From Ophelia neglecta (lineage: Eukaryota), in the NCBI GenBank assembly GCA_965285935.1, contig OZ260666.1:67456001-67520000 (forward strand): 64,000 bases of DNA, written 5' to 3'. Shown piece by piece: positions 32,647-60,971 of this stretch (positions are counted from its first letter, which is position 1; each line of letters opens with the position of its first letter). The notes beneath the pieces were generated by a model that saw only the letters and a program-made list of their open reading frames with translations, made no database searches and was not told the DNA's origin. Both the position numbers and the translations under genes were made by a program.

Positions 32647-32674
32647 ATGGATACAATTGTCCTCGAATCGGACG
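32647..32674 (+). CDS. Putative first coding exon of the SIM-RING-PARP gene (MDTIVLESD)
   Basis: Strong Kozak context; donor G|gtaaga in phase 1 matches the acceptor at 53631; the joined peptide MDTIVLESDDDDIIILGE is coherent. Confidence 0.65.
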
Positions 32675-33418
32675 GTAAGATTCTCATTCATCCTTCTCCT
32701 TGACTGTCTTTTCTGTTTATTGCATTAAAGTGAAAAAAATCAATTGTATTCACCGCTAAATCCCACAACTTGGCGCATTAAAAATAGGCACTTGTTTATG
32801 TTTTGGACCTGTACGAAAAAATCAGAAGAACGACAAGTGTTAATGTACATAACTTTACCCAATTGTCACTCCTGAAAAAAGTCAGTTTCATGGTTAACTT
32901 CAAATTGAAGAAAATAATGGTGGATATTATGCCCGTTTGCCATGAAGCTTAGTAGTGTATGACATTGCTTTATTTGCAAATGAGTTCTTTTTTGACATCA
33001 TTCGCATCCTAAAAATAAATTATATATTGTAGTAAAAACTGCCTAACATCAACGTTAAGCCTTTCATAAGATTACATATCCTATTTGGCACATGCCAGTG
33101 TTAAGGTGGCCGAGAGAAGGGTATGTTGGCTATAAATTGTGAGGTTTCCTGTTGTACACAGGTGGTGAGTCTGGATACTTGGTGTGTGTCTAGTAAATAA
33201 ACTATCAGACACAACACCTGCTGACACATCCTTGGGGAGTGAAAAACAGAAACACCCTACGTCAGCAACAGCGAATCAGGGAACAGCAGAAGAATAAGGG
33301 ATGATAGGGTTAGATTTGGTTTTTTCACTGCTGAATGCCTGGTCATTAATGTTGCCTAAAACTATCTGCACACCATCTGCCAATGTTGGGTCATCTCTGT
33401 TTTGTTTATACCATGCTT

Positions 33419-33651
33419 AGTGTGGGAATCCAAAGCAGATTAGCAGTACTTAAGTTGTAGACGGACCAGTGGAATAATTAAGTTTTACCTTCCCCATGAT
33501 CTACAATTCCTGATTTGCTAGAGTGGTAAACCTACAGTGTGGGAATTCCAGGCCCAAGGACAGTACTAAAGCTGTGACAGACCAGTGGAATAATTAAATT
33601 TTACCTGCCCCATGGTTTAAGATTCCTGATTTGGTACAGCCGCAAACCTAC
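33419..33651. repeat. Diverged 117-bp tandem duplication, 2 copies
   Basis: agtgtgggaat...gaccagtggaataattaa...aaacctac at 33419 and 33536. Confidence 0.8.
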
Positions 33652-34698
33652 GATATTTGGCAGGCAGCATAATTAGGGCTATTCCATTTTTGAACTGGGG
33701 GGGGGGGGGGCAGGATTTAAGAACCTTTTTGAAAAATATCATTTAGAGCATGTGTCTGATATGTACATTATGTTTTTTTCATATAACTTAGCAATATAAC
33801 TTGATCATTGAATCAACTTATGCTTCCCAGACAAACCAAGCCTGTCCATGATTGCAGCCTTTCAAAGTAGCATCATTACTTACAATTGGCAGACTGATTC
33901 TGCCTCATAAGCAGCGTACTAACTAATTACCTGTATTTATTTATGAATGGGGGATTTAGATCCAGTCTGCAAAAAAATACCTCAGTCTTTTTATACAAAA
34001 GTAAGTTTCAAAGGCTGATCTGATTGGTTGATTAGAGTCAAGCATGTTGAAGCTTATCAGTACAAAAGTTAAGCCCTGTTTAAATAATCAATGCTATGAT
34101 ATCCTGCTTCTATTGTATTCCATATTCATAAACCAGTGTTTATCCTCTAGAGCATGTTATGCTAAAAATGGAGTGTCTAGACAAGGGCATACAGATATAA
34201 ATGTTATAGAGAAAAGTTTGGGTAATTTCTGACTCCGAGAATAAATATATAGAACCTGACTTATTGCTAGGAGTCTCCTGGAAATCCAATTTCTGTCGAT
34301 ATGATTATCACAAATTTTTTTTTGATAGTTATTGATATTTCGAACTTTGCTAAGAAAAGTCAACAAACTGCAATAAAATTGTAGTTATGTATATATTTTT
34401 ATTATAACTGAATGACAGTAAGTATGGGAATGCCAAGTCATGGAACCAGCCTTAGCCTGCCTTGTGCACACTTAAAATAAAAAAAATATATAAAGAAAAA
34501 TAACGAAGTTTTGTAATATTCTCCAAAATGATATAGGTCCATGACTCTGATTGGCTGAGTATTCTCTAGGTTAACGTCCATGAGTCACACAATCTAACAA
34601 CACTTTGAAAGAACCAGCTGCTTGTACTTCACAAAGTTATGGTATAGTAAGACCAGTATATCTGCATTCTCAAGGTCAAGAGTCACAGGAGTGTTCCA

Positions 34699-35393
34699 TT
34701 TATTATATCCGCGAAATGCGGATAGATTTTAGTCGTTAACGCGATAATTCAAAAACTATTTCATACATCTTTTTAAAATTCAACACAGCCATAGACCTTA
34801 TTGAGAGGAGGAACTGATTAGATTCTGGTGAAAATCCAATAATTATTAATTAGTTACAACAATTAATTAATTACATCAGAAACGCATTTTCTGCAATAAC
34901 ACAAAAAATATGTGATACATCTTTTTCAAATTTTACACAGCGATAGAACTTATTGAGAGAAAGACCTGTATTTATTCTGGTGAATTTCTGATAATTATTA
35001 ATTAGTTGAAATAATTAATTAGTTATGTCAAGAACACATTTTCTATCAAATATTCCAAAGTATAGATGATATTGGCTTGAAGTTTTGTGTCATAATTCAT
35101 GTAATAACTATATACAATCTGTGTAAGAAGTTAACTAGTTAACTTTATTAATGACCTGAAAAAAATTTATTTAAGGTGGTTTTGCATTATTCTTGAGGTC
35201 ATATGGAACCAACTTTATTAATGACCTGCATTATTTTTGAGGTCATATAGAACCTACTACAATCTGTTTAATAAGTTAACTAGTACTGTGTAATAAGTTA
35301 ACTAGTTACCGGTAACTTTATTAATGACCTCAACAAAAATTAGTTAAGGTTGTTATCTTTTGTGCCAATTAAAAACTACCATATTCACTACCT
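34699..35393 (+). mobile_element. HINE/Helentron-like non-autonomous element with 152-bp core repeats
   Basis: 5' T-run and hairpin tatccgc-gaaat-gcggata, followed by tandem ~152-bp units (34766, 34918). Confidence 0.6.
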
Positions 35394-37076
35394 CGCCTCA
35401 TGCCATGTTCCCCATTCGATTATTGCACGCATTCGATGATTTATACCCCTTGCTGTCGGCCCCCAGACAGCGTTGGCCTAGATTATCAAAGGCCCCACCT
35501 GCAGTAGAAAATATTCTTTCTAATGGAATACTAGCTGCTGGTTACAGCAAGTAAATTATGTCAATCAACACTCTTCTAGGCCAAATATCAATATAAATAT
35601 GACAAATAGGCATTAGAGCCTTTTATCACTCAGAATATGCTGGTTACTTACTGGCTAGGCTGCTGGTCATATTCGGTTAATAAACAACTGTGTAGGCTTA
35701 TCTACATGTATGTTACTTTACATTTCTACTGCAGTATATTCTAAAATTCTTGTAAATGTGTTTCTCAGTCCAATGCATCTGATGTAGATGCACACACATA
35801 TTTTTTTGTGTTTAAATACTCCTGAACAGCTGACACTCTTTGTATATTTTACACGTGGCTTGTCTGTAACTTCACTTTTTTGGCATGAATTCTGCCACAT
35901 CAACACTTTAAGTATTTTATTTGTTTATTAAGAACTAAATGCAGGTACACGTAGGCTTGAATATTGATATAAAGTTGGTTTGTGTGATATCGCTACGCAC
36001 ATTGAGGAATTGGCAACGGTGATATATCGCTGTGGGTATCTATGACAGTCCTACTTACTGCCTTTAATAACCCTTTATATGAGTCAGACACCTGTGACTC
36101 TTAATCATGCAAGGTAAATAAATATTGAGTAAACATCTCTCTGAAAGGTCATTGCTATATACTGTAATGTGATCAAGGCTTTGTGTCATTGGCCAATCTT
36201 ATTAGAATGTTTCAAGGTGCAAATGTGGTTCTAGCTTTTCTTTACATTTCATCAGATTCAATCAACAACTTATTTACAGTGATGTATCTGTTGAAAATTC
36301 TTGGCGAGGCACCATTTATCATTTGGGGTGGGGCAGCTGGTGGGGGAAGGAGAAGAACAATGTTGGTGACCTTTTTATTTTTGCAAGGTGTTCGACCTGC
36401 TTTTTTGGGAGGCAAAAATACATAGGAGAGGGTGTCTGAGACCAACTATTTTCTCCAATTATTGAGTTGAGGTCTTGCCTGTTACTACATGTGCTAACTG
36501 AAAATATGTGATGATCAATCGGTTGTGTGTATCCTATGATTGATTATGAAGTTTGCACCAATTGACATCACTGCTGTCAAGTAGCCTGCCTAGTGAATAA
36601 TGGATTTTCAGTTAGAGCGCCATCTGGAGGGCGTTGCTGCGCAACCCGACAGGGTGGTGCAAACATTCGCTTCGGCCATACCAGATTAGCGTGAATGCAA
36701 TGCAGGTGCGGCTTGAAATCGATCGGAATTTAACACAGTTTTTAGTCAAGTAGGTATCATTTATTAAACTATTCTTGATATAATATGGTCAGATATCTTA
36801 TAGTCATGACATAACTTAGACCTGAGAGCCGTTTTGGCTTAAAAAACGGAGATTTCATGCGGATTTTATAGTAGCCGTTCGAAGGTAGCGCGGGCGATAT
36901 TATGGTATATTTCCATTACGTCGTGCCTAGCAATCAACCGGCGGTGTCGGCAAATGCTATTTCTTTGCTACAAAATTCAGTATTGTCCTTTTTATGATTA
37001 ATTGGCTATGACTTCACATTACCTCGCTTCTGAATGTATCCAAATAATATGATTTATTTATTTACAGTCGTCAGAA

Positions 37077-37259
37077 ATGGGCAACAAGCGATGTGCTCAT
37101 GGCACTTGTAACAGTGACAGCAGGTATGGCCCAGAGGGGAAGAGACCAAGACCAGATATGGTGGGAGTAAAGTTTATAGGGTCCCTACCATTTTGTAAAC
37201 CTTTTGTTGATGCAGCAAAATGCAGAGAATGGGTTAGACTATGCAACAGGAAAAATTGA
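37077..37259 (+). pseudogene. Truncated THAP-domain ORF (N-terminal half)
   Basis: MGNKRCAHGTCNSDSRY...F..KP...KCREWVRLCNR; lacks the terminal C/H ligands. Confidence 0.8.
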
Positions 37260-37322
37260 GACACTGTAAATTAATGCACTATACACTCTAAATGCTGTGG
37301 GACAAGTAGCCTTGGCTTTTTG

Positions 37323-37643
37323 TTAGGGATAGGCCATGTTTTCATCTCTCTGTATTTGTGCTTTCCGTGCTTTCTTTGTCACCAACCTTGCCTTGGTATT
37401 CTCTGACATATCAATGGCAGGGAGTGGGTTTGGGAAGTCAGAATGGGGCTTCCCTGTGTCGTCCAACTTGATGAAATGTTTGGTGCAGATAAATGTGTAC
37501 TGTGTCACCTCTTTCACAGTAAATTTTTTCCTGTTGCATAGTCTAACCCATTCTCTGCATTTTGCTTCATAAACAGAAGGTTTACAGAATGAGATGAACT
37601 TTACTCCCACTAGGCCTATATCTGGTCTTGGTCTCTTCCCCTC
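37323..37643 (-). pseudogene. THAP-domain remnant (C-terminal half)
   Basis: KCREWVRLCNRK...YTFICTKHF...PNPLPA; the N-terminal CxxxxC is removed by a 67-bp deletion relative to the other arm. Confidence 0.8.
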
Positions 37644-40600
37644 TGTAAATAAATAAATCATATTATTTCGATACATTCAGAAGCGAGGTAAAGTGAAGTC
37701 ATAGCCAATTAATCTTAAAATGAACAATACTGAACTTTGTAGCAAAGAAATCGCATTTGCCGACACCGCCGGTTGATTACTAGGCGCGACGTAATGTAAA
37801 TATACCATAATATCGCCCGCGCTACCTTCGAACGGCTACTATAAAATCCGCATGAAATCTCCGTTATTTAAGCCAAAACGGCTCTCTGGTCTAAGTTATG
37901 TCATGACTATAAGGTATCAGACCATATGATATCAAGAATAGTTTAATAAATGATACCTGCTTAACTAGAAACTGTGTTTAATTCCGAACGATTTCAAGCC
38001 GCACCTGCATTGCATTCACGCTAGTCTGGTATGGCCGAAGCAAATGTTTGCCCAGGCCGAGTGTCGCGTAGCAACAACGAGCGGTGTGGACCGCGCACTG
38101 AAAAAGGCTTATTCTGGATAAGTTTAACCTATAGCAACCACCAAGCAAGAGTATAACATTACATAAACACCTGGAGTCAGGACCTTCATATATGACCTTG
38201 AACAACCTGCAGACTCTAGCCATTATCTGGCGAATCACAACATATAAAAATAGACATGTACTGTTTAGATAATGTTTGGAGACATGCAAAAAGTCTGATC
38301 AGGAATGTTTACTTGCAGATATATCATTGATGTAAGGTGGGGATCAGTCTGGATTGGGAGGGACACAACAGGAAACTGTTAGGCTGGGAATTAAAACGTG
38401 CAGGCCTTACTATAATGGTACATGTATATGATATTGGGTTGGGAGGAGGGGTGCTGATTTAGGTCTGGCCAGAAACCCCCATTTAGGATACATGTGGGTT
38501 TATATGACCCTTTGATTAAGAAGGGGAGTTGTGGGGGAGGGTGGGAGGGACATCCTCCCTGACTCCAATAGAGATTTAAAAAAAGTTAACAACAGAAAGT
38601 AATATTGGATCAATACTGTTAACCAGAATAATTTGGCGGCTTGGAATTGTGGCAGAGATTGCCTTGGGATATTTTGATGGCAGAAAATTCAGCCATTCAC
38701 ATCCTGCACGCAAAAATTTCCTGCTTAAAGTGGATGAAGACCTTTTTTTAATTGATTATAACGAAAGTGCTTCACCCATGTTGTCACATGCTGTAATAAG
38801 AGGAACCACTTCATAGGCCAATGTACAGTGTTGACTATTGGAGTCTTTTAATAGGGAGAGGTAAGGATGGGTTAGGATGGAGGGTACCATACACCCTCCC
38901 TGACATAAGATGCTCCCAAGAGCAGCAATCCTGAAAGGGAAGGGGTGCGACTCTCCCCAGCCCCCCCCCCCCACCCCCACCCCTTCTGCATCAGCCGCCA
39001 TCAGAGATCCCCACCCTAATGTGACATCAACCCCACCCCTAGATCTGGATGCTTGAAACTATCCATTTGCATATGAATAATGGCAAACTGGTAGTTTAGA
39101 CAGGTAAACTGCAAGATGCTTTACATGTAAGATGCATTGGCAATCCTATACGAGTATATATATACATATATATATAAAATATGTGGTTTACCGGTAATTG
39201 TATTTTGATACTTATTAAAACAGTTCTGTTGCTGGTGAGAAAATAAGAGTTATTTTCTTTATTATACTGTACCATAATCAATAAGTGGTAAAGATATGGA
39301 ATGTACTTGACATTGTTTATGTTGAACTTGTCTAACTTGTCCCTATGGCCTTATCCAAGGGTCAGAACTTCTAGAAGCTTTATAATGATCTTCAAGTACA
39401 CAAGTATGTGTTCATACAGGCTAGTCAGGCAGGACAGAAAGGAAATCTTGGTAGTAAAATTCCGCTGAGGTGGCTTACCTGACTTAAAACTCTTCAAACT
39501 GGTGTAAATCGTGTGTTTAACATTACAGGGTGTGAATTGTATAGGATAGTGATGACTGGTGACTATGTAGATCTTTCCTGTTTGATGAATTAAAAACTTT
39601 GTCCCCTATTCTTGATTTTTTGTACCCATCTCAAAAATATGTCTCCAATATTGCTACCAGTGATCTATGATTATTGCTTATATAAAAACTGATGTTTTTC
39701 ATGGAAAATGTTAAAGCTTAAAGCTGTTACCATTGGACAAGATGTCTGTCAACAATGTACTAAGCCGATTTTTTCTTAGTATTTTAACCTGCTTTTGTAA
39801 TATAGCTGCAGATTAGTTTCGATTTCAAATTTATAAAAATATTTGTTTTGCAGTTGTGAGTAGGTGTCAAGCCATGTGTGGAAATCAAAACACTGTCACT
39901 TGTTAAATGATTCCCTTCATGAAAATACCTCATTAATGGTAGACAATAATTGATTATAATAATAAACTTTTAATGATGCTGTTATGATCCAATGATATAT
40001 GCTTAGCAGATAATAATAACTTCCCTAGAAAAAGATAAAAACATGATATTACTGTTGTTAAATATGAAATGGTATATTGAAAGTTTTAGCACTAGTATTT
40101 TGACTGGCAGAATTTAGCATTTATCAAAAATGGTTCATCACTGCTGGAATATGAAAATTATTGACTGGAATCTATGTTTATATCCTCATCAATAGTTATG
40201 AAATAGATACCCCCTAATAATCCTACCCATTACAATATTTAAAACTCTCAGCATGGATATTTGCATGTACATGTACATGTAGGTATGTACATGTATGAAT
40301 GCAGTGAGTGCTGTATACAGTATGTTGTCTGATTTGTACAAAAGTACAATTAACAGTCAATTTAACAATCATGGCCCTTGTGAGTGTGGATCTGAAAAAA
40401 TGGGCATTTGCTACGTTTGACCAGGGCCAAATAACCAATAAACCAGTTACTGGGAAGAGTAACATAAATATGGAAGCCTGTGGAGGGGGCCACTATGATA
40501 ATCAGTGTCTATTCTAAGAGTTTTATTGCTAACAGAGCTATGGGCATAGCTACGAGCATCGCTATTGGCTGGACTAAGATGGTTCTAGGAAAGCATAACT

Positions 40601-43600
40601 GGACGAACCACTAACGAAGAATTCTAGTCTAAATAATTGAAGATCAACTGGTAGGAGAGCTGTGTATCATTTATTGTCATATGATACATATAGGGATATA
40701 TTCTACTCTATTTAAAAACATATAGCGATGCACATTCATTACATGTGGCAAAGAAGATAAAAAAAAGAAGGATTTACTGTGAACAGATGTTACATGATAC
40801 TACTTTCATTTGAGGTAGCTGGCCAGGAAATTTGTGATCAAAAGTTATTCAAAAAATCAGCTCTGCTTTTTCTAACAGCAAATGTTAACTATGAAGATTT
40901 GAGTAAAGTTACATGTGTCCTTACGATTTTCCTACCAGTTTTAAGTGGTTTTATCAGGCCAAGAGTGGTATCCACTTATCACACTGTACATATCTGTAGG
41001 CTGTTTTTTGATACCAGTGGCGTGTCGCAGTTAAATGCCGGATATATTGTGACATATCAATTCACCTCTAGATGGTTGTGGTAGTTTTTTTTATCTTCAA
41101 GGTTCTGTTCTGCTAGTGTTACTTGGTTTGGGATCACCAACCAATAAAACTATATTGTGCATATTGTTGTAATATTATATAATTTATTATTTTATTTTAT
41201 TACACATCAGTTGCCCAATTTCTCTTGCACAAACTCTATAGGGTTGTCATAAGTTTACCTTGATTAAACAACATATTTTCTGCAATTAATGATTATGTTA
41301 AATAAATGCCCACCCCCAACACAATATTCTGTTTTTATACACACATGTACTGTCAAGGCGTAATGCGAACCCTGAGAATATTGACACTTTTCTTTAAGCA
41401 TACAAGATAAAAACAATCCACTTTCATTTTAAAACTCTGATACCTGCAAAATGGTGGCATATGTCTAGCAATCTGTTAATAAAATCCAAAACATCTTTGA
41501 AATGAAAAGTATCCATTTGAATAAGGTATACTCATAGCTGTTTTGGGAATTTTTTTCAACACCTCATACGATGTCTGGTCTTGTAGACTGGTCGATGATC
41601 TATTACAATCATATCTCCCTTTAAAACAATCTGGTTTTGCCTCAGCTAAACAATTTCCCTACTAATAAATAAGGTTTCCCTCTTGAGGTATATAATTGTT
41701 AGAATGTGCTAGAACCTTCAATGTACATCAAAATGAATCACACTCACACCAAATAGTTGAAGGGACCAATGTGCAAACACCTGTTACTTATAAAAGGTGT
41801 GTGGGCAATGTAAAATCTTAGTGTCATGATGAACTAATTTAGTTTAAGTGAATCAAAAATCACAGAATGGAATTAAAGAGGATATTTACCATTAAAAACT
41901 CCTTTTTTTCAATCATATTTGGAGAGCTTTTTTGGAAGCTTTAATACATACATGTACATCATAGCATGACATACCTGAAAGATTTTTCCTGATAATATAG
42001 TAAGATATTGCATGCATCTAAACATTCAAGCCACGACATTACTACCATACATGAATATGATATTGTGGATTTCTGTGATATATTGCTGTAGTCATCTCCC
42101 ATTGCATAAGCTCAGTTGGTTTTGTGAGAGAGATAATGCCTTGATGTCATAAAATATTTGTTGCCATTCGAAATTTTTCCTTATTCAGCCCTGTTCTTAG
42201 AATTTTATCAGTAGCCATTGTGCTTTAATCAGTGGCGTTCTTATTCGGGCTCTTAATGCTGAAAAGCATGTGACAAGACATTTAGACTAGTTGGTGATCA
42301 GCCAATCCTGGGATGTGGTGTCATAACCTGAAAAGTAAATAGTATGGCCTAAGCATGTTTTATTCAAGGCCTTTGAACTACTTGGGTTTAGGAAAGGAAC
42401 ACTCCTAGTGATGTATGCAACCAGAAAGTGTCATAAGATTGGACACAGCTAGCCAGGGTAATGGTAAGTGGTGACTGAGTTTATAGATTTTATTGTGCCC
42501 TGTAGCCATGCCATTGATAAAAAAATCCTGTGGCATGTTTTACTTGAATACTTTTTGCATTCATTTGTGTACTTAATATAGTGATATATTCAGTAACCCT
42601 GATCAAAGGCTTGTACTTCATACAGTTGATTAAAATGTACATTTGTTAATTCTTATAGAATAGTCAATCTTAAAGCATTTTAAACATTGAAAATTATGCA
42701 TAAGCTGTAAACATAGCTGTTGCTTAACATGTACTAAGCAGGATCAGATGAATAAATAAATGAAAAAAAAATTCTGTACCATCTAAGCATATGCCTGGTG
42801 AAAATTAAAAACAGTCACAAGATAATCATGTTAATTCCATAGATTGAAACTATAAAGAGTGATAAGGCTAAGGTTATTGACAGGGTCACTATTCATTTAT
42901 TATCCTCATAATAAAAACAATCACATGAGTCCAAATGTACAGGTATGTGTTAATCCTTTTTGACCCCCAAGTGTTCAATGCTGTGATCATGTCTTGGAAC
43001 ATAAAGTGTTTATTAGCGTTCAGGTCACCTACAAATCAGCATGATCTGGAGAGGGTTAAATTCTTAAAGTCAGGAAAAACGTTAGAGCATTTTATTATTC
43101 ATTCAAATTTGTGTCTGAAGTGGCTACTCCTCTGATTTCATGGCTTTCCTGTCCTCTTTCATATACATTTGGGACAGGAACATGGGTATTTGACAAAACT
43201 GGGTTTAGTTTTGTCTGAATCATTGCTTAGTCTCTCACTGGAAAATACCAATGGATCCCAAGAAGACACTATGATCAGGTTTTTTTTAGCAAGGCAATAG
43301 TTTAGTACGTACACAAAAGTCAGTAAATAACATTACTGTTGCAGGGTTATTGTTTTTTTCCATGCCGTGCAGCGGTGCTGGGCTGCCTCTATGGTGTAGG
43401 CAGAGCACCGCTTATCAGTTATGGTTAGGGGAGGTTATCTGCATTGCATTGAAGCATGTCAGGTGGGTATTGGTGGTGCTTAACATGTGGAGTTCACATA
43501 AAAAATATTTACTGCGAACAAGGTGTTTGGTATGAGAAGATTTATTTATGGTAAATTAAAATATTACATTCATTGGACCAATTTTACATTTACCTATGGT

Positions 43601-44654: not shown

Positions 44655-44838
44655 TAAATACATGTCCGTTTTCGCTTCTGGTTTTAAGACACCCTGTATG
44701 TAGTAAATACATTTCTCTTTTTGCCTCTGGCTTTTAGGCACCCTGTATGTAGTAAATACATTTCTCTTTTTGCCTCTGGCTTTTAAGCACCCTGTATGTA
44801 GTAAATACATGTCTGCCTTTGCCCCTGGCTTTAAGGCA
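44655..44838. repeat. 49-bp minisatellite, ~4 copies
   Basis: caccctgtatgtagtaaatacat at 44690, 44739, 44788. Confidence 0.9.
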
Positions 44839-51311: not shown

Positions 51312-51314
51312 ATA

Positions 51315-51463
51315 CACTGTGTTCACTTTATCACTATCTACAGATGAGGTCAGGTATTATAATCTGACTCTGAACCCCTTGAAGTAGACCCTCCTCTCCA
51401 CGGATTGCCTGTATGAGCCACTGGCCAGAGGGCAACTGTGACGAGGAAGGTCCACTTCAAGGG
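51315..51463. mobile_element. Palindromic MITE copy, left arm interrupted by the ISL2EU element
   Basis: Stem cccttgaagtagaccctcctc / gaggaaggtccacttcaaggg; homologous to 59955-60193 and 8390-8490. Confidence 0.65.
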
Positions 51464-52865: not shown

Positions 52866-53080
52866 GCCTCTCAGTCTGACAGTTTGGGTTAAACCCCCTC
52901 CCCCCCGTCCCTCTCAGTCTGACAGTTTGGGTTCAACCCCCCCCCCCCCCCCCCCGGTCCCTCTCAGTCTGACAGTTTGGATCTAGACCCTCTTGGTCTC
53001 TCCCAATATGACAGAGGATTGACAGTAAAGAGCAGCGTTGGTCCAGACCCTCCTGGTCCCTCTAAATCTCACAGCGGATT
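52866..53080. repeat. Degenerate ~40-50-bp tandem repeat with C-tracts
   Basis: cctctcagtctgacagtttgg three times plus two degenerate units. Confidence 0.8.
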
Positions 53081-53630
53081 GGAGGTAAACATGCAGTTTA
53101 ATAAACTTCCCCAAACAATCCAGGTTACTCTAAATCAAGAATTTTCTCAGGCAGAAATATTTTGCTATTTATGTTTTACAATGGATTTTGGACATGAAAT
53201 TTTCAAAGAGAAATGCTTGTGAGTGAGTTTCCAAAGAATCTGGGAAATCACATACAGGAAAAGCTCACTAGCTGGAAATTTTGTTAACATTTCCAAGCAG
53301 GAAAAAGTTCCCAGTTAATAATATTCCGGGTCAAGAACCAGTTCCATTGTGAAAGTTGTCCTTGTAAGTTCTTTGCTACTTATAGTGCAGGTTAACGTGT
53401 ACATGTACATATAGGTGTAATTATGCTATGAAATTTACGCCAGCATGTGTGCACAGTGGAAAAATCCCCTCGATAATAATAGAGAAAAAATACTGATTGA
53501 TGTTGTGGCGGCTGACTATGAAAAAAAATCCTTTTGGGTTAGTCAGTGTATCATGCTCCAATGTATAGCTCCAACACTTAAAGCATAATGATTTATTATC
53601 TTGTAATCCGTTTTATTCTCATAATTTTAG

Positions 53631-56600
53631 ATGATGACATCATCATACTGGGTGAGAAGATGGCTGTAGCCAATGAGGAGAGTGACGATGATGTGATATT
53701 CATCCCAACGCGTCGTAGGAACAGAGAGTCTGCCTCCACCCCACTCCTGGCCCCCATCCCTGGGCCCAGTACATCCACGGACCAGAGCCCGGTGGATTGT
53801 CTGGATGCCACTAGGGGCGCTGTTGTACCGGAATGTCACGAGAAACTTCCTGGGGATAACCTTCTACCAACGGAGGCAGAACTGGCCAACGCCGTGGACA
53901 GCATAACTCCATTAATGACCACTGACACCTCTGATATCGGTCTGTGTATGCCATACTTCTTTGGTATGGATTACAAGAGTACAGCTCCATTGACAGGCCA
54001 ATCTAATGGAGATACCTCAACATCTCACAATCTGTGTCCAAAAAGTGACATTAACAACTCTTTAACTCAGTCAGAATCTAATGATATGGATTCGGTGATG
54101 TTACCCTCTGCTGAATCTCTCGGAATACCGTGCAATAAGCGGGAAACTTCTTCAGGTAACCCAAAATGTCAAGGCAAAGGTGAAGGTCACGCAGTATCTG
54201 TCAGTTGGTTAGATGACACAAACCAGGACTCTCCGATGTCAAATCTAAAAGGATATGGTTACAATATATCTGATTCCAGTAGTAGTAGTAGTGATTGTAG
54301 TGGAGATGATTTGATGTCCTTTAAAAGCCACCATTCTACGTCAGATCAGAAGCAAACTGGGCATACAATGCTCTCGGACATTTCTGATTTATCTGACGAT
54401 GATTCAGAGGAGGCAGTCAGTGACCAGAGTGACAATGATACATCTATTCTCTCACTTCCAGCTTGCCCTGCGGCTACATCAATCAGCATTACTACTACGC
54501 GACGACAAAACACCACTACCTGCACCATTCGACAAAGTATTGACCATTCCAACGAGCTACCAGATTTAGATGATCGCAATCAAGACACCGCTAAAGATTT
54601 GCTGAGAATTGGATGGGACCCATCAAGTGGTTCTGAAAGCAGTGACCAAAACATTGATTGTTCTTACGATCTTAACGATCTTAACTTGGACAGTACTGCC
54701 ACCACTAAGGCTAGAAATGGAGGCCCCTCTCAGAGTGATAACAAACAAGTGAATGGAAGTGAACATGACTTGCCAGATTTGGATACTTCCATTAGAGACC
54801 CTGATAAAAATGATGCCTTGGTACATGTTGCATGGTTGCCCGTCAATCCAAACAATACTACTATCAGCACACCAAGAAAGGAAGAGCCAGTGACGCTGCC
54901 AAATATAGATGATAGCAAAGCAGATGTTTGGTTGAATAACCCAAGTGATTCTAATTCAGAACCTGAGTCTGACGATTCTGTCGTGGTGGTTGCAATAAAA
55001 AATCCACATGGGTCGAAGAAGAAAAATTTTACTAGGGGGACGGAATTGCCGGCGAGTGACAAAACATCATGTACCATTCCCTCTGTTGCTGCGTCGGCAA
55101 CTTCCTCCAGCAAGGGAGCACTTATGGACCAGTCTGTCTCATCCACAACATCTCCAGTTGACCAACAAGCTACAGTATTGTTGGATAAGACTAACAGGTC
55201 ATCACTGGCCCAGCACGAACAGTTCCTTACCGGTCATATCCCTGTACCTCAGATTCCTAGGAAAAATGATAGTCCTCAAGAGACTAGCAAAAACAGCACT
55301 GGCAATAAAATGTTTAGTGCTAGTTCTGGAAGTCCATCTATGAGTGAAACAGCTCCATCAGATCTTAGGCTCGGTCCGTGCCAAGATCTGGCTGCCAGGA
55401 AAAGAGATTCTTTGCATTTAATGGATGGCATAATGACACATGAAACTGATGTACACATTGCTGCCAGTACACGTCAAATAACAGAAGCTGCTGGTTTAAA
55501 CACAAGTTCGGGCAGCACATCATCCACGCTGAGTTATAATGCGGCATCATCAGGGTGTGTTTCATCATCGAATTCATCAGCAGGGTTTGTCAACACAACT
55601 GTTTCTGCTCCAGGGCCTTTTCCTAAAACTAATAGCCAGACACAAGAAAAAGGCTATGAAGACATGTTGGGGCTTTTTGACAGTGGGGATAGCCTACCGA
55701 CAATTTCAGGCCCACGGAAAGCTTTCCAGCCACCTGCCACAGGAACCAGCACTTCAGCAGCAACAAGCAGTGCACAATTAAAAACTGAGAAAGATCCAAT
55801 GGACCTTTCTTTAAAGAAACCGAGGTCTTTCAGGAACATTGTCGTGGCCAAAGGGAAATATCCAATACCAAAGTTAGTGGTGAAAATAAAGCATGAATAT
55901 AAAAACCAAGACTGGTCATATTATGAATCAAATTCAGGCAAAAGTAGTACCTGCTCCACTACTCCGGGAACTCCCAATTCCGCCTCAGGCAGTTCCAGCC
56001 CTTCTGGTTTATTCAAACGAAAGCTGCCTCCAGCTAATATAGCAGCCATCAAATACCACATGGGGCAGGATCAGCAGGGCGGCGATACCTTGGGCCTTCT
56101 CCCAGGCTCAGCCCCAGCCGCTCTGCCTCCCAGGCCTACAGCCACACAGCAGGACACCTCACAGGTACCATTTAAAAAGAGGAACTTTGGCAAGGACATG
56201 GCAAGTGCACTAAATGCATACAAGGCTACTAGGCTAGGAGCTTTCCATTCACCTTGCCCAGCTAAGGGATTGGTACAAAAGGGACTCCAGCCACACTCTC
56301 AAAATCCCTTTATGTCCTCCATCATCAGAGCAGGTAAAAATAACCCGTCAGGCCCCAGCATACAAACCTCCAACTCTGCAAGTCAGGTGATCAATACACA
56401 ACCAATACCGACCATTTCTGATCATGTGTCGTTAAGCCCCAAATATCTAAATCATGTGGCGACTTCTGGGTACAGTGCTGGCATTTCTGATCCCGCGGTC
56501 AGTTTAGGGCCCAGCTCTACCGCCTCTGGTCATGTGACGAGCTCAGGGCCAAGGTCAAGCACTTCTGGTCATGTGACGAGCTCAGGGCCAAGGTCAAGCA

Positions 56601-57070
56601 CTTCTGGTCATGTGATGGTAAGTACCTCTGGTCAAGCGATGAGCTCAGCACCAAACCCAGTCACTGTTGCCCAAATAATCAAATCTGCAACGAATAGCTA
56701 TGGTTACAAAATCGGTTCAGTAGTCTTTCCTAGCCCTGCCACTTTTGCAACAACCTCAGATATCATGATGCGAAGCACCGCCAACAACGTTTCCATCTCT
56801 AGTACAATACTGGCTCCTACAGGCGCGGCTACCAGCACGTTACAAGTCACAAGCTGTCTTGCTGCCCCTACCCCATCCACATCCCAGGAGTCGGAGCAGA
56901 CGTCATCCCAGGAGTCGGAGCAGACGTCGAGTGCTGAATCCCGTTATACGTGTAAGCACTGCCTAAACCTAACACTGAGTGAGGAGATCAGCCGCTGTAT
57001 GTCCTGGCATGGCTGCTGTGGCCAGTGTCTGCGACAGGAGGTGAAGAAACTACTCGCTACAAACAAAAAG
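53631..57070 (+). CDS. 3440-nt exon: SIMs, S/T/D-rich disordered region, first six RING ligands
   Basis: Within the 1167-aa ORF; acceptor ttttag at 53630, donor gtaatt at 57071; ends CKHC-x11-CMSWHGCCGQC. Confidence 0.92.
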
Positions 57071-57730
57071 GTAATTCCCCCACTCTTGTAAACAACTCTG
57101 GTATAAATAGATTACAGTTGCTGTGGTTACTGTAAACCTATCTCAGTTACCATGGGTATCTAAGTCATCCTGGTTTTTATAATCCACCATTGTTTACTAT
57201 AGTTACTAACAATCTCTAATACTTACCATGGTTACTGTCAGATTCCATTGTTACCTCATTTACCATTGTTACGTCATTGACCAAATTGCTGTCTATCTAT
57301 CTGCTAATATTTGGTGAAATCACTGAGTTGTCTTCTTTTTAGGAAAAAAAAAACATTGAAGCTAATTACAACATAGTTGCACTTTAAATATACATTTAAG
57401 TGAAAATTGTAAGTAATCAAAATGCAACTGTGGACTGACAGAATGTTGTGATTTTCTGCTCAGAATTAATATAAGTTAGGGATTTATTATTTAAGTTATC
57501 GTTTGTACTTGAGAGCCGCCTTATACTAGTTGTAGCGTAAATGCCTGACTTTTTAAAGCAATTTACTTTTTCAACATTATATCCATCAACTAATCTATTG
57601 TCATTCCAGCTTTGTGGTCCAGCATTTGACTGTTTTGCTGGAGATGGTAATAAATGACAATAATGTAAAAATCTGTGTAATATGATATCCAATATATTTC
57701 ATGGATATTAGTCTTTGTCTTTTTCTCCAG

Positions 57731-57779
57731 GGGGCGCTTCGCTGTGTATACCCAGGCTGTGATAGTTACTACTCCACAA
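57731..57779 (+). CDS. Exon completing the RING domain (GALRCVYPGCDSYYST)
   Basis: ctccag acceptor, gtaagt donor, phase 0 to 1; supplies C7-x4-C8. Confidence 0.88.
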
Positions 57780-58049
57780 GTAAGTTAAACATTGGACACC
57801 TGTGATATTCCTGTAACTCCTAAATAAATAATGTATATAAACACAGAAAAGACACTCTTAATGACTAGGTCAGGCTGATGGGACTATTCATTGCCTGAGG
57901 TGAATTATTTGTAGTGAGTGGATGTGTCGCCTTCCAACTTCTCAAAATATTAAGCCCTGTTGCTTATTCAGGTTCTGCCATGGCACCCAGTTATTATTCA
58001 TTTTCTTGCCACATCAGCTTGATACTTTTTCATATTCTCTCCAGGATAT

Positions 58050-58491
58050 GACGGTTTTATTTATTATCTCACATTGACAGCCTGAAATTTCTAATTTATG
58101 TTCTTGCCATAACAGCCTGGTACTTATCCATGTTCCCACCATTACTTACTGTTTCTTATACATGTTCTCACCATAGCTGATTGTTTTCATCATTACGGTT
58201 GGTTACTTATCCATATCCTCACCATTACAGCCTGTTTCTTATACATGTTCTCACCATAGCTGCTTGTTTTCATCATTACGGTTGGTTACTTATCCATATC
58301 CTCACCATTACAGCCTGTTTCTTATACATGTTCTCACCATAGCTGCATTTTTTCATCATTACAGTTGGTTATTTATCCATATCCTCACCATTACAGCCTG
58401 TTTCTTATACATGTTCTCACCATAATAGCATGTTTCCTATACATGTTTCCACCTTTACAGCATATTCTCATCCATGTTCTCACTGTTACAG
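58050..58491. repeat. Minisatellite with an 83-bp higher-order period ending at a splice acceptor
   Basis: ttggtta(c/t)ttatccatatcctcaccattacagcctg at 58199, 58282, 58365; ~31-bp subunits. Confidence 0.9.
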
Positions 58492-58715
58492 CTGAGTTGA
58501 AGAGAGCACTACCCCCCATTCTGGTTGAGATCCTAGAAGAGAAGCTGGACAGTTATGCCATTGACATAGTTACCAGTGACGAGCTTCCAGCGTTTAACCC
58601 CAGCCAGGGGACTCCTGACTTCGGGAAGATGGAGACGGCGGAGAACAACAAGCCCGGCGGGCCAAGGCTGGTCAGACTGCCTGGATACTGGGAGCCCATG
58701 GACCCGGACTCCACG
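58492..58715 (+). CDS. Exon: post-RING helix, linker and PARP pre-catalytic motif (ELKRALPPILVEILEEK...LPGYWEPMDPDST)
   Basis: ttacag acceptor, gtaggc donor, phase 1 to 0. Confidence 0.85.
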
Positions 58716-59065
58716 GTAGGCAAATACCAGATGATTGACGCGGGTATAGAGAGGAGAGGGAGGAGGGAGGGGGAGAGAGAGGTGGGGGATAAGACATCAA
58801 GCTCAGGACCTCTGCTTGTAGAGAGCTCCCCATACCTGAGAACATGTATAATGAAAGATGTTACCTTTAAAATATATTTGGCTTGGCTTAGCAGAAGCAT
58901 AGTTCAACTACAGTGAATTAACTCTCAACATTAGGATGCCTCCTTGCTATCTGCAATTGCTTCCAGTTTGTCTCCAGAGTGTGGGACTGTGTCTCCACCC
59001 TGGGTATAGTCCCCATCCCCTATCGGGGAGGAGACACATCCCCTACCCATAACAGAGGACCTTTA

Positions 59066-59260
59066 TTTTTATGCCTCCGCCCTGAAGGGTCCGGAGGCAT
59101 TATGTAGTCGTGTTGTCCGTCCGTCCGCTTCTGACCAATTCTTCACAAAATCTTTTGTCCGCAAATTAACTTTCTGTTAGAGTCGACTTCTGTCCCAATC
59201 GAGTTCTATCTAGTTGGATGAAAACTTAGATTTGCCAATGTGCAAGATTTCCTCTTCATT
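59066..59260 (+). mobile_element. 5' end of a HINE/DINE-1-like element
   Basis: tttttatgcctccg...cggaggcat subterminal inverted repeat followed by a (gtcc)n microsatellite. Confidence 0.7.
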
Positions 59261-59954
59261 TATAAGTTACCATTCAGGTTCCATTGATTGGACTCATAAT
59301 CATTGTCTTGTTGTATATAAAAAGCCTCGGGTCTTAGCCCTGCCCTAAGTAGCAGTCTCCCACTAAACTGCACTGGCTGTCACTCTAGCAACCCAAAACA
59401 AATTAACAGGACTTTAGTAGCACATCAGAAATACTGCCATACATCGTGTTGCATATATGAATAAGCTGATACTAGCCAGGCAGATTGTGTTCTATATCAA
59501 AGCAGTGGCCTGAAAATTCCTGTTGAATTGTTTCCAGTGCAAATGAGGTAGACTTTACTGACAGAAAATCTATGTAGGTCTTTTTTATGTAATATACAGG
59601 TGCCTGTATAGTTTTAAAAGAGGGTAATATGTACATGTCATATGAGAAGGCTTGCCCTGAACAAGTAATTTTTTTTACCTTTGAAATGTCAAATGGGTCT
59701 GGTTAACATGGCTTCTGTTTAACTCATTCACTTTTGAATTAGTTTATTTGGTCTCTGTGTACCCCTCAATGACACTGAATGAGTAGAGCCCGGATTTCCA
59801 GACATGATCAATCATTATGGGTAATAATTTTTGGCTTTGGTGTCAAGTCAACCCTGAAACCATTTCCCACATGGATCGTTTTACACCTACATATACTTAG
59901 ATATGGAAATGAGCCTTGTAGCTGTGGCAATCAAGCTACTGGAAATAGAACCAT

Positions 59955-60193
59955 ACTCTGTGGTGATGCCCGCTTCACTGTTCACACTTATTCTAGTCAT
60001 TTTAGGGATTTTCTTACATAATCTGACTAGAGCCCCTAGAAGTAGACCCTCCTCTCCATGGACTACCATCTTTGGTCAGTGGCCACAGAGACCAAATTAT
60101 ATAGAGGAGGTTGTACTTGAAGGAGCTCAGAGTTGAGTTATGCTGCATGGGTCCATAGGATAACATCAGTGAAAGTGGGCAGCACCACCGAGA
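59955..60193. mobile_element. Palindromic MITE, most complete copy
   Basis: Outer IR tggtgatgcccgcttcactg / cagtgaaagtgggcagcacca; inner IR ataatctgact..gaagtagaccctcctc / gaggaggttgtacttgaagg..agttat. Confidence 0.65.
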
Positions 60194-60825
60194 AAGATTG
60201 TACCAATACCATTGAGGTCAGTTATTATGGCTTGTACCCGTCAACCTTACAGGTCGGAGGATATTTTGATAGCCTGCATGAGCAGTGAGGGGATGTTGAC
60301 TAGCCGGCTAGCCATCCAGGCGACCTTAGTGACTTGACATTGACTTTGGCTTGATTAAGGTGTATTTTCATCACCTCCTTGTGGCTTTAACTCTGCAAGA
60401 TAAGCCATGAGGTTGACTCCAAATGTCTTATGCTCAGAATCTAAGTGTGGCATTGATTTTGACACTCTTCTCATTTCAAGAAAAATTGGAAATTTTGCTA
60501 GATGAGCTAGATGCTAGATGCCCTATAACAACAGCTTTAACAGCCGTCTTTTCTTAGGAATCAGACGGGAGCCTCCAGCTCATTTTGATTGTTGTTAATC
60601 ATGCTTGATTTGGTTAAAAATTGTTCCTAAATGGAATAAATAATATCAAGTTGCTATTAACTGTATTAATATTTAGTAATATATCAGTTATCAGATCTTA
60701 GTAAGACTATATTAGACAAATTCCCCAAATTTATTTCTTTTAAAATGTGTAAATGGATGTTTTTTTCCCTAGCTGTCTATTTTGGTTTCTGGCCTGAATT
60801 TCTCTCCTTCGGTGTTGTATTTCAG

Positions 60826-60971
60826 GACTATAAGCTGGTGATATTAGACCCCTCGATGAACGAACACATCATGGTGAAGGAGATGTTTCACCAGACAATG
60901 TCACATCCGAGGGCCAAAATACTGAAGATAACCCGCGTCCAGAACCCGGTTCTCTATCAGTTCTACTGTGT
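60826..60971 (+). CDS. Exon: N-terminal part of a PARP (ART) catalytic domain; gene continues beyond this exon
   Basis: tttcag acceptor, gtaagt donor; DYKLVILDPSMNEHIMVKEMFHQTM...KILKITRVQNPVLYQFY matches the PARP7/10/11/12/14/15 pattern. Confidence 0.85.

What the first reader, a model, noticed from the sequence alone, without database searches (positions are those of the whole stretch)
32647..60971. Chimeric SIM-cluster + RNF216-type RING1 + PARP domain protein: candidate SUMO-targeted ubiquitin/ADP-ribose dual enzyme
Seen: five phase-compatible exons encode about 1295 aa. The N-terminal region has acidic-flanked hydrophobic SIM-like motifs (TIVLESD, DDDIIIL, SDDDVIFI, SDDSVVVVAI). The RING has C-x2-C-x11-C-x3-H-x2-C-x2-C-x18-C-x4-C spacing and is followed by STTELKRALP. 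A short linker then leads to LPGYWEPM...YKLVIL...EHIMVKEMFHQTM...KITRVQNPVLYQFY. Established: the C-x3-H / C-x4-C spacing and the following EL..LP helix match RING1 of the RBR ligase RNF216/TRIAD3 as I recall it; poly-SIM plus RING defines STUbLs (RNF4, RNF111); the last motif is the start of the catalytic domain of mono-ART PARPs (PARP7/10/11/12/14/15). Inference: IBR-RING2 has been replaced by a PARP domain, giving one polypeptide that could read SUMO chains, recruit an E2~Ub and ADP-ribosylate. I know of no characterised protein with this architecture.
Basis: partly seen in the sequence, partly recalled or inferred. Interest (0 to 1): 0.88.

Follow-up and report, generated by a model that had tools for sequence, protein, structure and literature searches.

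The report
SIM + RNF216-type RING1 + PARP gene
This is a real, intact invertebrate gene from a conserved but unstudied mollusc and annelid family that joins the SUMO-binding motifs and first RING finger of the ubiquitin ligase RNF216 to a PARP7/12-type mono-ADP-ribosyltransferase, so one protein touches three protein-tagging systems.

Summary
Two further exons lie 2.4-3.4 kb beyond the window and complete a PARP catalytic domain with an H-Y-I triad. The full coding sequence is 7 exons and 1523 aa.

- **Exon order:** the exons map in order, without overlap, onto single-ORF, cDNA-like contigs of other species.
- **Family:** at least 34 proteins share the layout, from about 25 mollusc species and one annelid.
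- **Conservation:** the eight zinc ligands of the RING are invariant in 29 sequences, and three N-terminal SIMs are kept in most members.
- **RING identity:** the RING plus its trailing helix matches only RNF216 among solved structures, by sequence and by fold.
- **PARP identity:** the PARP domain is closest to PARP12 and TIPARP.
- **Not the RNF216 ortholog:** canonical RNF216 genes with IBR-RING2 lie on other chromosomes.

All family members are labelled "uncharacterized", and I found no paper on this layout.

Function is inferred. The protein is most likely a SUMO-directed, probably nuclear, mono-ADP-ribosyltransferase that keeps an RBR-type docking site for E2~ubiquitin. There is no RNA evidence for this species.

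The parts
32647..32674 (+). Exon 1: start codon and SIM1 (MDTIVLESD, core TIVL at 32653-32664). The donor GT follows in phase 1.
   Evidence: Direct reading. It matches the N-termini of orthologs, for example P0010 'CVIVVESDDDDDIIVV'.
53631..57070 (+). Exon 2 (3440 nt). It carries SIM2 IIIL at 53639-53650 and SIM3 VIFI at 53693-53704. A Ser/Thr/Pro-rich stretch of about 1050 aa with no Pfam match follows. It also holds a PMDLS (PxDLS-type) motif at 55796-55810 and the first six RING1 ligands from 56951.
   Evidence: ORF and reading; no Pfam domain. PxDLS; the tail aligns to P0010 residues 597-660.
56951..57760 (+). RING1 zinc-ligand span (C-x2-C-x11-C-x3-H-x2-C-x2-C-x18-C-x4-C), interrupted by intron 2 (57071-57730).
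   Evidence: Direct reading. All 8 ligands are invariant in 29 family members. RNF216 is the only PDB sequence hit for the orthologous region and the best fold hit.
57731..57779 (+). Exon 3 (49 nt): GALRCVYPGCDSYYST, carrying RING1 ligands 7 and 8.
   Evidence: It aligns to P0010 residues 661-674 at 64% identity.
58492..58715 (+). Exon 4 (224 nt). It encodes the helix that follows RING1 (T-ELKRALPPILVEILEEKL, about 58492-58565), a linker of about 35 aa, and the first PARP-domain strand (LPGYWEPM, from 58677). Both halves of the fusion are on this one exon.
   Evidence: The exon is single copy in the genome. It aligns to P0010 residues 678-743. L, L and P of the helix are invariant.
60826..60971 (+). 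Exon 5 (146 nt): DYKLVILDPSMNEHIMVKEMFHQTMSHPRAKILKITRVQNPVLYQFYC, the N-terminal part of the PARP catalytic domain. The gene continues beyond the window's end. Exon 6 is L031:2360-2511 (G000:C9:67522360-67522511, which would be window position 66360-66511) and carries LLFHGT, the triad His. Exon 7 is L031:2866-3398 (which would be 66866-67398). It carries GTYFA (triad Tyr), an insert of about 75 aa, AIYVIFE (triad Ile), YPEYIVEY and the stop codon.
   Evidence: Exon 5 aligns to P0010 residues 747-793 and to 14 other orthologs. Exons 6 and 7: (direct reading), Pfam PARP at E 1.2e-5 and 1.4e-6, and the ortholog-PARP12 alignment.
60972..64000 (+). First part of intron 5. The intron runs on to L031:2359, about 5.4 kb in all. 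It contains a helicase-like transposon remnant on the minus strand at 63109-63459.
   Evidence: Donor gtaagt at 60972, acceptor attacag ending at L031:2359, ORF list.

Best explanation
**What it is.** A real, intact, single-copy 7-exon gene encoding a 1523-aa protein. It belongs to a conserved lophotrochozoan family found in molluscs and at least one annelid.

**Layout, from N- to C-terminus.**
- Three N-terminal SIMs.
- A long region that Pfam leaves unmatched, with PxDLS and basic NLS-like motifs in most members.
- The RING1 and RING1-IBR helix of an RNF216-like ancestor.
- A flexible linker.
- A PARP7/12-type H-Y-I mono-ADP-ribosyltransferase domain with a variable insert.

**Shown.** The gene structure, the homologies, and the invariance of the zinc ligands and NAD+-site residues.

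**Inferred.**
- The SIMs bring the enzyme to SUMO-modified, probably nuclear, targets, which the PARP domain mono-ADP-ribosylates.
- The strictly conserved RING1-helix is kept as an RBR-style docking site for E2~ubiquitin or ubiquitin. This couples the ADP-ribosylation to the ubiquitin system without the usual RING2 catalytic cysteine.
- The chemistry of that coupling is unknown.
For: **Gene model.**
- GT-AG junctions and fitting phases.
- The exons map collinearly onto the cDNA-like single-ORF contig L034/P0010.
- Exon 4 alone spans the RING1 helix and the PARP start, and is single copy.

**Family.**
- 14 of the best 150 HMMER hits to exon 7 carry the same RING pattern plus a C-terminal PARP domain.
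- A second search adds about 20 more.
- Named members come from bivalves, gastropods, a chiton and the annelid Owenia.

**Constraint.**
- 8 RING ligands plus L..LP are invariant in 29 sequences.
- 57 of 60 invariant columns are kept in the window's exons.
- 31 of 34 members have at least 2 N-terminal SIMs.

**RING identity.**
- RNF216 is the only PDB sequence hit (E 2.3e-5).
- The region aligns to this genome's own canonical RNF216 (E 4e-6 and 5e-7).
- The AF2 model's best fold match is 8eb0_A, RNF216.
- The Atlas neighbours are RBR/RNF216 clusters.

**PARP identity.**
- PARP12 at E 1.8e-46.
- TIPARP is the next-best group of proteins outside the family.
- The H-Y-I triad is read directly.

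**Literature.** RNF216 has SIMs, and RBR RING1 domains bind E2~Ub in the open state (PMC9834252; PMC13153464).
Against: - There is no RNA evidence for this species. The only runs that hold the locus behave as DNA.
- No biochemical datum exists for any family member.
- The residue between the first two RING cysteines, a canonical E2 contact, is variable and often polar in the family, so E2 binding is not assured.
- SIM function is inferred from motif and conservation only.
- Pfam does not recognise the RING.
- The AF2 model does not pack the RING against the PARP domain (pTM 0.52, linker pLDDT below 50), so no fixed geometry between the two sites is predicted.
Confidence: 0.55

Rival explanations
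1. It is a SUMO-directed mono-ADP-ribosyltransferase only. The RNF216-derived RING1 no longer binds any E2 and serves as a zinc scaffold for folding, substrate binding or partner binding. The protein would then have no ubiquitin-related activity.
For: - The canonical E2-contact position between Cys1 and Cys2 is not conserved in the family: H, G, N, T, L, Q, D, K, Y and V all occur.
- There is no IBR or RING2 to receive ubiquitin.
- RBR RING1 domains do not activate E2~Ub discharge by themselves (PMC9834252).
Against: - The zinc ligands, the central helix (CLExxVK) and the whole trailing helix (SELKxxLPSMVVEILExKL) are kept across more than 25 species. That is more than a bare scaffold needs.
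- In RNF216 itself the equivalent contact residue is a Cys, and mutating it has no effect on activity.
Confidence: 0.25
2. It is a true STUbL. The RING works as a direct E3 like RNF4 or RNF111 on poly-SUMO targets, and the PARP domain adds or regulates through auto-MARylation.
For: - A SIM cluster plus a RING is the STUbL layout.
- The SIMs are conserved.
- The RING is complete, with 8 ligands.
Against: - The RING is of the RBR RING1 type. That type stabilises open E2~Ub and prevents direct discharge.
- No conserved Arg or Lys linchpin follows the last Cys; the consensus there is C-x-S-x-Y-P.
- The model predicts no RING dimer element.
Confidence: 0.1
3. It is an artefact. The RING exons and the PARP exons belong to two neighbouring genes, or the locus is an unexpressed pseudogene in this genome.
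For: - No RNA run was found for this organism.
- The laid runs show no splice joints because they are DNA-like.
- Intron 1 is 21 kb long and full of transposon remnants.
Against: - Exon 4 carries both halves on one exon.
- The exons are collinear with single-ORF cDNA-like contigs and with more than 30 annotated orthologs.
- All 7 exons are open.
- 57 of 60 invariant residues are kept.
- Variants in the DNA runs are substitutions in exon 2, and indels occur only in introns.
Confidence: 0.04

Closest known systems
RNF216 / TRIAD3 (SIM-CUE-RING1-IBR-RING2 RBR ubiquitin ligase)
   Same: - It has N-terminal SIMs (PMC9834252 Fig. 1 legend; PMC13153464).
- RING1 has the same ligand spacing, including the unusual final C-x4-C.
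- The RING1-IBR helix is retained: 'SELEKVLP...' in RNF216 against 'TELKRALP...' here.
- It is the only PDB sequence hit and the best fold hit.
   Different: - The window's gene has no IBR, no RING2/Rcat catalytic cysteine, and no CUE-type region detected.
- A PARP catalytic domain takes their place.
- The genome keeps separate canonical RNF216 genes on other chromosomes, so this gene is a derived paralog, not the ortholog.
PARP7 (TIPARP) / PARP12 / PARP11 mono-ADP-ribosyltransferases
   Same: - The catalytic domain has an H-Y-I triad.
- PARP12 is the best PDB match (E 1.8e-46).
- TIPARP is the next-best protein group outside the family.
   Different: - There are no CCCH zinc fingers and no WWE domain.
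- A variable insert of about 75-390 aa sits between the 'YSHxYTD' helix and the 'MFLARVLVG' strand.
- From my own knowledge, tankyrases carry their zinc-binding motif in the same loop.
DTX3L-PARP9/PARP14, DTX2-PARP7 and RNF146-tankyrase pairs
   Same: A ubiquitin-system RING is functionally coupled to an ADP-ribosyltransferase. PARP7 with DTX2 makes ADPr-Ub hybrid marks (PMC12687431).
   Different: - Those are separate polypeptides.
- They use a canonical RING plus a DTC or WWE domain that binds ADP-ribose.
- Here the two halves are one chain, the RING is RBR-type, and no DTC or WWE domain is present.
Dictyostelium clade-3 PARPs with an N-terminal U-box
   Same: An E2-binding-type domain is fused to a mono-ART PARP domain in one protein (PMC4245714).
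   Different: - They carry a U-box rather than an RBR RING1.
- They come with macro, WWE or RRM domains and no SIM cluster.
- They are an unrelated lineage, so the fusion is independent.
STUbLs RNF4 / RNF111
   Same: A cluster of acid-flanked SIMs sits N-terminal to a RING.
   Different: Their RINGs are canonical, activating RINGs (dimeric in RNF4) with a linchpin residue, and they have no ART domain.

Membership tests
PARP / ARTD family, mono-ART (H-Y-hydrophobic) class | Match to the PARP catalytic-domain profile (PF00644) | tested here: met
   - Exon 6 scores E 1.2e-5 and exon 7 E 1.4e-6.
- The genome scan finds the exon-6 hit at C9:67522367-67522546.
- Orthologs score E 1e-18 to 1e-26.
PARP / ARTD family, mono-ART (H-Y-hydrophobic) class | His-Tyr-(Ile/Leu/Val) in place of the H-Y-E triad | tested here: met
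   - LLFHGT, GTYFA and AIYVIFE are read directly.
- The positions are fixed by the ortholog-PARP12 alignment.
- Family members have I or V at the third position.
PARP / ARTD family, mono-ART (H-Y-hydrophobic) class | NAD+-dependent mono-ADP-ribosylation activity | not testable with these tools
   This needs a recombinant protein assay.
PARP7/11/12/13 (CCCH-WWE PARP) subfamily | The catalytic domain is closest to this clade | tested here: met
   PARP12 scores 1.8e-46 against PARP15 at 7e-28 and PARP10 at 1e-24. TIPARP proteins are the next best after the family.
PARP7/11/12/13 (CCCH-WWE PARP) subfamily | CCCH zinc fingers and/or a WWE domain upstream of the catalytic domain | tested here: not met
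   Pfam finds no such domain in the exons or in nine full-length orthologs.
RBR E3 ligases (RING1-IBR-RING2) | RING1 of RBR type followed by the RING1-IBR helix | tested here: met
   - Sequence hit to RNF216 RING1-helix only.
- Fold hits are RNF216, then parkin and HOIP RING1.
RBR E3 ligases (RING1-IBR-RING2) | IBR domain and RING2 (Rcat) with a catalytic cysteine | tested here: not met
   - The ORF runs from the helix through a linker straight into PARP and ends at a stop codon.
- There is no IBR profile hit within 8 Mb on C9.
- RNF216-type RING2 exons occur only on C1 and C8.
RNF216 orthologs | Being the genome's RNF216 counterpart | tested here: not met
   A canonical RING1-IBR-RING2 RNF216 gene lies at C1:63.507 Mb (L039). 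Further RING2 paralogs lie at C1:40.05 and 40.12 Mb and at C8:81.28 Mb.
SUMO-targeted ubiquitin ligases (STUbL) | A cluster of SIMs | tested here: met
   Three acid-flanked hydrophobic cores lie within the first 35 residues. 31 of 34 family members have at least two such motifs. This rests on motif and conservation only; binding was not tested.
SUMO-targeted ubiquitin ligases (STUbL) | A RING that directly activates E2~Ub discharge (linchpin residue, closed conformation) | tested here: inconclusive
   - No conserved basic residue follows the last Cys (consensus CxSxYP).
- The RING is of the RBR type, which favours open E2~Ub.
- Activity itself cannot be tested here.

The most novel reading that the evidence does not exclude
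The family is a single-chain writer of hybrid marks on SUMO-modified targets.
- The RNF216-type RING1-helix holds E2~ubiquitin in the open, thioester-exposed state.
- The adjacent PARP7/12-type domain supplies the acceptor or the attacking group. That could be ADP-ribose on the substrate, on the enzyme's own insert, or on ubiquitin or the E2 itself.
- Ubiquitin and ADP-ribose would then be joined without a DTC domain and without an RBR catalytic cysteine.
- This would be a route to ADPr-Ub independent of the Deltex family, and it would be gated by SUMO.
Probability: 0.12. Interest if true: 0.9.

Novelty: new variant of a known kind. Interest (0 to 1): 0.62.

Why it matters
Cross-talk between ADP-ribosylation and ubiquitination is a young field. 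It covers ADPr-Ub hybrid marks, DTX-PARP pairs and RNF114/RNF166 readers, and all known cases act in trans between separate proteins.

A natural fusion kept for hundreds of millions of years argues strongly that its parts work together. This fusion holds three parts:
- a SUMO-reading module;
- the E2~Ub-docking half of an RBR ligase, without its catalytic half;
- a PARP7/12-type mono-ART.

It gives a concrete, testable protein for three questions:
- Can an RBR RING1 serve an acceptor other than RING2?
- Does SUMO direct MARylation?
- What did RNF216's N-terminal SIMs evolve to do?

The family is single copy and present in tractable species such as oysters, scallops, mussels, Biomphalaria and Owenia. 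It also corrects dozens of database entries that read "uncharacterized", "serine-rich adhesin" or "zinc finger CCCH-type antiviral".

Tried and rejected
- **Pfam on single exons 2, 4, 5 and the RING piece:** nothing useful. The pieces are too short and the RING is split over three exons.
- **PDB sequence search with the 43-aa RING piece of the window:** only noise.
- **The search for homologous proteins with exon 2, RING tail or whole:** no hit. The long N-terminal region evolves fast, and no close relative of this species is in the collection.
- **PF26191 (RNF216 RING-HC):** not in the local Pfam copy.
- **RNA evidence:**
  - The look-up of sequencing runs returned three runs of unknown kind from one sample.
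  - Laid on 56700-61100, their contigs run through the introns at even depth with no splice joints. They are DNA and say nothing on expression.
- **SIM cluster in this genome's canonical RNF216:** I searched 10 kb upstream of it. Only one weak SIM-like stretch (TVDLTLDNDIV) was seen, so the SIM homology to RNF216 rests on the literature on the human protein.
- **IBR profile scan:** it did not even detect the canonical RNF216 IBR. I therefore repeated the test with that gene's own RING2 exon.
- **Taxon look-up for Logan and JGI members:** it gave no names.
- **Rejected readings:**
  - Two adjacent genes.
  - That this gene is the RNF216 ortholog.
  - PARP10/14/15-type catalytic domain.
- Everything on the window was done exon by exon. 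Contiguous analyses used cDNA-like ortholog loci L034 and L035 or database proteins.
- **Complex prediction:** not used. No SUMO or E2 sequence was available by reference.


Full report
**1. The observation**

Reading the window at the given coordinates confirms every exon and motif.
- Exon 1 (32647-32674) encodes MDTIVLESD and ends at a gtaag donor in phase 1.
- Exon 2 (53631-57070) continues D-DD-IIILGEK...ESDDDVIFIP.
  - About 1050 residues of Ser/Thr/Pro-rich sequence follow, with no Pfam domain.
  - It ends with CKHCLNLTLSEEISRCMSWHGCCGQCLRQEVKKLLATNKK.
- Exon 3 (57731-57779) encodes GALRCVYPGCDSYYST.
- Exon 4 (58492-58715) encodes (T)ELKRALPPILVEILEEKL, then a linker, then LPGYWEPMDPDST.
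- Exon 5 (60826-60971) encodes DYKLVIL...KITRVQNPVLYQFYC.
- All junctions are GT-AG and the phases fit. The five exons total 3887 nt, about 1295 codons.
- The RING spacing is exactly C-x2-C-x11-C-x3-H-x2-C-x2-C-x18-C-x4-C.

**2. The missing end of the gene**

- A PARP-profile scan of the window's own assembly places the window at G000:C9:67456001-67520000. It finds a PARP hit 2.4 kb past the window's end.
- I fetched that DNA as L031. It holds two more exons.
  - Exon 6 (L031:2360-2511) encodes KRNQMKK...ERLLFHGT...AAYGD.
  - Exon 7 (L031:2866-3398) encodes GTYFARDSSYSHSYTD, an insert of about 75 residues rich in Pro, Ser and Asn, then MMFLAHVLVGNYTLG...KPPP...CYDSCV...AIYVIFESAQVYPEYIVEY and a stop codon.
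- Phases fit again. The Gly of G-x-G-T-Y-F-A is split g|gg across the last intron.
- The complete CDS is 4569 nt, or 1523 aa.
- The catalytic triad is His (LFHGT), Tyr (GTYFA) and Ile (A-I-YVIF), the mono-ART signature.
- Pfam PF00644 matches exon 6 (E 1.2e-5) and exon 7 (E 1.4e-6) on their own.

**3. One gene or two**

- Exon 4 alone carries both the helix that follows the RING and the first PARP strand. It is single copy in the genome.
- A HMMER search of 1.84 billion representative proteins with exon 7 returned, among its best 150 hits, 14 proteins of 739-1189 aa. Each has the same RING pattern upstream of a C-terminal PARP domain.
- Two of these (P0010, P0047) sit on contigs of 3.2-3.4 kb with short flanks around one ORF, so they look like cDNA.
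- The window's exons align to consecutive stretches of P0010:
  - exon 2 tail to 597-660
  - exon 3 to 661-674
  - exon 4 to 678-743
  - exon 5 to 747-793
  - exon 6 to 796-844
  - exon 7 to 847-1006
- This supports all junctions by homology, although not with RNA from this species.
- No RNA run was found. The three runs that hold the locus give contigs that run through the introns with no joints, so they are DNA.
  - They confirm the assembly.
  - Differences are substitutions in exon 2, and indels occur only in introns.

**4. The family**

- A second search and name look-ups give at least 34 members. Named sources:
  - Bivalves: Mizuhopecten, Pecten, Argopecten, Mytilus, Saccostrea, Pinctada, Solemya, Potamilus, Sinanodonta, Mactra, Mya.
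  - Gastropods: Haliotis, Patella, Gigantopelta, Batillaria, Littorina, Lymnaea, Physella, Biomphalaria, Bulinus, Bradybaena.
  - A chiton (Liolophura).
  - By pattern, the annelid Owenia.
- All are labelled "uncharacterized", "Poly [ADP-ribose] polymerase", "PARP7S", or carry misleading names.
- In alignments of 18 and 29 sequences these positions are invariant or nearly so:
  - the eight RING ligands
  - L..LP of the following helix
  - the NAD+-site residues H-G-T, G-x-G-x-Y-F-A, PPP, DSCV and YPEY
- The window's exons, added one by one, keep 57 of the 60 invariant columns. The exceptions are W to Y, D to E, and the split Gly codon.
- 31 of 34 members have at least two acid-flanked SIMs in their first 90 residues, and 26 have three. 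The window's MDTIVLESDDDDIIILGEK...DDDVIFIP mirrors P0010's CVIVVESDDDDDIIVV...HDVIFV, which also validates the distant exon 1.
- The window's protein is about equally distant from all members (roughly 45-55% identity in the PARP core). No close relative is in the databases.

**5. What the parts are**

*RING.*
- The RING-helix region of P0010, taken by reference from the cDNA-like locus, hits only RNF216 among all PDB sequences (8EB0 and 7M4M, E 2.3e-5). The alignment runs through the ligands and the helix.
- It aligns to this genome's own canonical RNF216 (E 4e-6, and 5e-7 for P0047).
- An AF2 model of the region has mean pLDDT 77. Its best Foldseek match is 8eb0_A, RNF216 (prob 1.0, TMq 0.66, 2.5 Å). 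Parkin and HOIP RING1-helix follow.
- The Atlas neighbours are RBR and RNF216 clusters.

*PARP.*
- The best PDB match is PARP12 (1.8e-46), far ahead of PARP15, PARP10 and PARP14.
- After the family itself, the next-best proteins are vertebrate TIPARP.
- The insert lies exactly where PARP12 has 2-3 residues. It ranges from about 75 to about 390 residues in the family.

*Whole C-terminal half.* A model of it shows a confident RING, a long helix, a linker with pLDDT below 50, and a confident PARP core. There is no confident inter-domain packing (pTM 0.52).

**6. Relation to RNF216**

- The genome has a canonical RNF216 gene with RING1, IBR and RING2 at C1:63.507 Mb.
- Further RNF216-type RING2 exons lie at C1:40.05 and 40.12 Mb and at C8:81.28 Mb. 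None lies near the window.
- So this gene is a derived paralog, not the ortholog, and it cannot splice to IBR-RING2 exons nearby.
- Published domain maps of human RNF216 show N-terminal SIMs, a CUE-like domain and the RBR (PMC9834252, PMC13153464).
- The family therefore plausibly kept both ends of the RNF216 N-terminal half, the SIMs and the RING1-helix, and swapped the ubiquitin-transfer module for a PARP domain.
- I could not confirm a tri-SIM cluster in this genome's canonical RNF216.

**7. How it most likely works**

*Shown:* the architecture and the constraint on it.

*Inferred:*
- (a) The SIMs target SUMO-modified proteins.
- (b) The H-Y-I domain mono-ADP-ribosylates.
- (c) The RING1-helix is retained as a docking site for E2~Ub or ubiquitin.
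  - RBR RING1 domains bind the E2 canonically but hold E2~Ub open and prevent direct discharge (PMC9834252).
  - The family has no conserved basic linchpin after the last Cys (consensus CxSxYP).
  - Plain RNF4-like ligase activity is therefore unlikely.
- A PLDLS (CtBP-type) motif in about 20 of 34 members, and an LPPKKQKR-like basic motif before the RING in about 22 of 34, point to a nuclear, chromatin-linked role. The window has PMDLS at 55796-55810.
- The most novel reading still open is that the PARP domain provides the acceptor for ubiquitin carried by the RING1-bound E2. That would be a Deltex-independent way to make ADPr-Ub (context: PMC12687431).
- Counter-indication: the residue between Cys1 and Cys2, a usual E2 contact, is variable in the family. 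In RNF216 that position is a Cys whose mutation is harmless.

**8. Novelty**

- E3-type domains fused to PARPs are known. Dictyostelium has a U-box-PARP (PMC4245714), and ubiquitin-ADPr cooperation in trans is well described.
- Eight full-text searches found no description of an RBR RING1 or an RNF216-derived module fused to a PARP, or of a SIM-bearing PARP.
- The proteins are in public databases but unnamed.
- I rate it a new variant of a known kind: real, old, conserved, unstudied, with function untested.

**9. Limits**

- The window was handled exon by exon, and contiguous analyses used ortholog loci or database proteins.
- No stretch was taken for human.
- No N runs were touched.
- Earlier notes of this scan on other parts of this genome describe many other ART-domain fusions. 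They give context only and were not tested here.

Noticed in passing
window 55796-55810; family members P0047, P0058, P0188, P0189 and others, around residue 100: A PLDLS(S)K motif, the classic CtBP-binding PxDLS, occurs in about 20 of 34 family members just after the SIMs. The window has PMDLSLKKPR further along exon 2. A basic LPPKKQKR-like motif precedes the RING in about 22 of 34 members. The window has FKRKLPP in exon 2, but its place relative to the RING was not located.
   Followed up: partly
L039 (G000:C1:63506487-63509687, minus strand) and G000:C1:40.05 Mb, C1:40.12 Mb, C8:81.28 Mb: The canonical RNF216 gene has RING1 and IBR on one exon and RING2 on the next. Three further loci carry RNF216-type RING2 exons at 55-62% identity. 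This suggests a small RNF216 expansion in this genome.
   Followed up: partly
window 59052-59345 (intron 4): A short interspersed repeat reaches a summed contig depth of up to about 95,000 in the DNA runs, against about 30 for its flanks. It is a very high-copy element. A second, milder repeat lies at 59934-60227.
   Followed up: no
window 58150-58460 (intron 3, just upstream of exon 4): Four to five tandem copies of a unit of about 70 bp (...catgttctcaccatagctg...ccatatcctcaccattacagcctgtttcttata) run up to the exon 4 acceptor. Each copy carries an acceptor-like 'ttacag'.
   Followed up: no
window 63109-63459 (minus strand, intron 5): An ORF resembles the C-terminal part of a PIF1/Helitron-type helicase (...ILIPRIKLAPSD...FPARIAYLMTINKAQG). 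It is probably a transposon remnant.
   Followed up: no
window 37077-37259 (+) and 37323-37676 (-), intron 1: Two inverted ORFs share a THAP-like zinc-finger stretch (GKRPRPDxVGVKFI...FCKPxVxxAKCREWVRLCNRK). This suggests an inverted duplicate of a THAP/P-element-type element.
   Followed up: no
window about 56500-56930 (exon 2, before the RING): Short in-frame peptide repeats (SGHVTSSGPRSSTSGHVTSSGPRSSTSGHV and SQESEQTSSQESEQTSS). Substitution polymorphisms among the DNA runs lie at 56752-56902.
   Followed up: no
P0001 (Ptychodera flava, 709 aa): The best-scoring hit to exon 7 is a hemichordate protein with three tandem PARP catalytic domains (xFHGT at 130, 355 and 578) and no RING. It is a different architecture built on the same PARP clade.
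   Followed up: no
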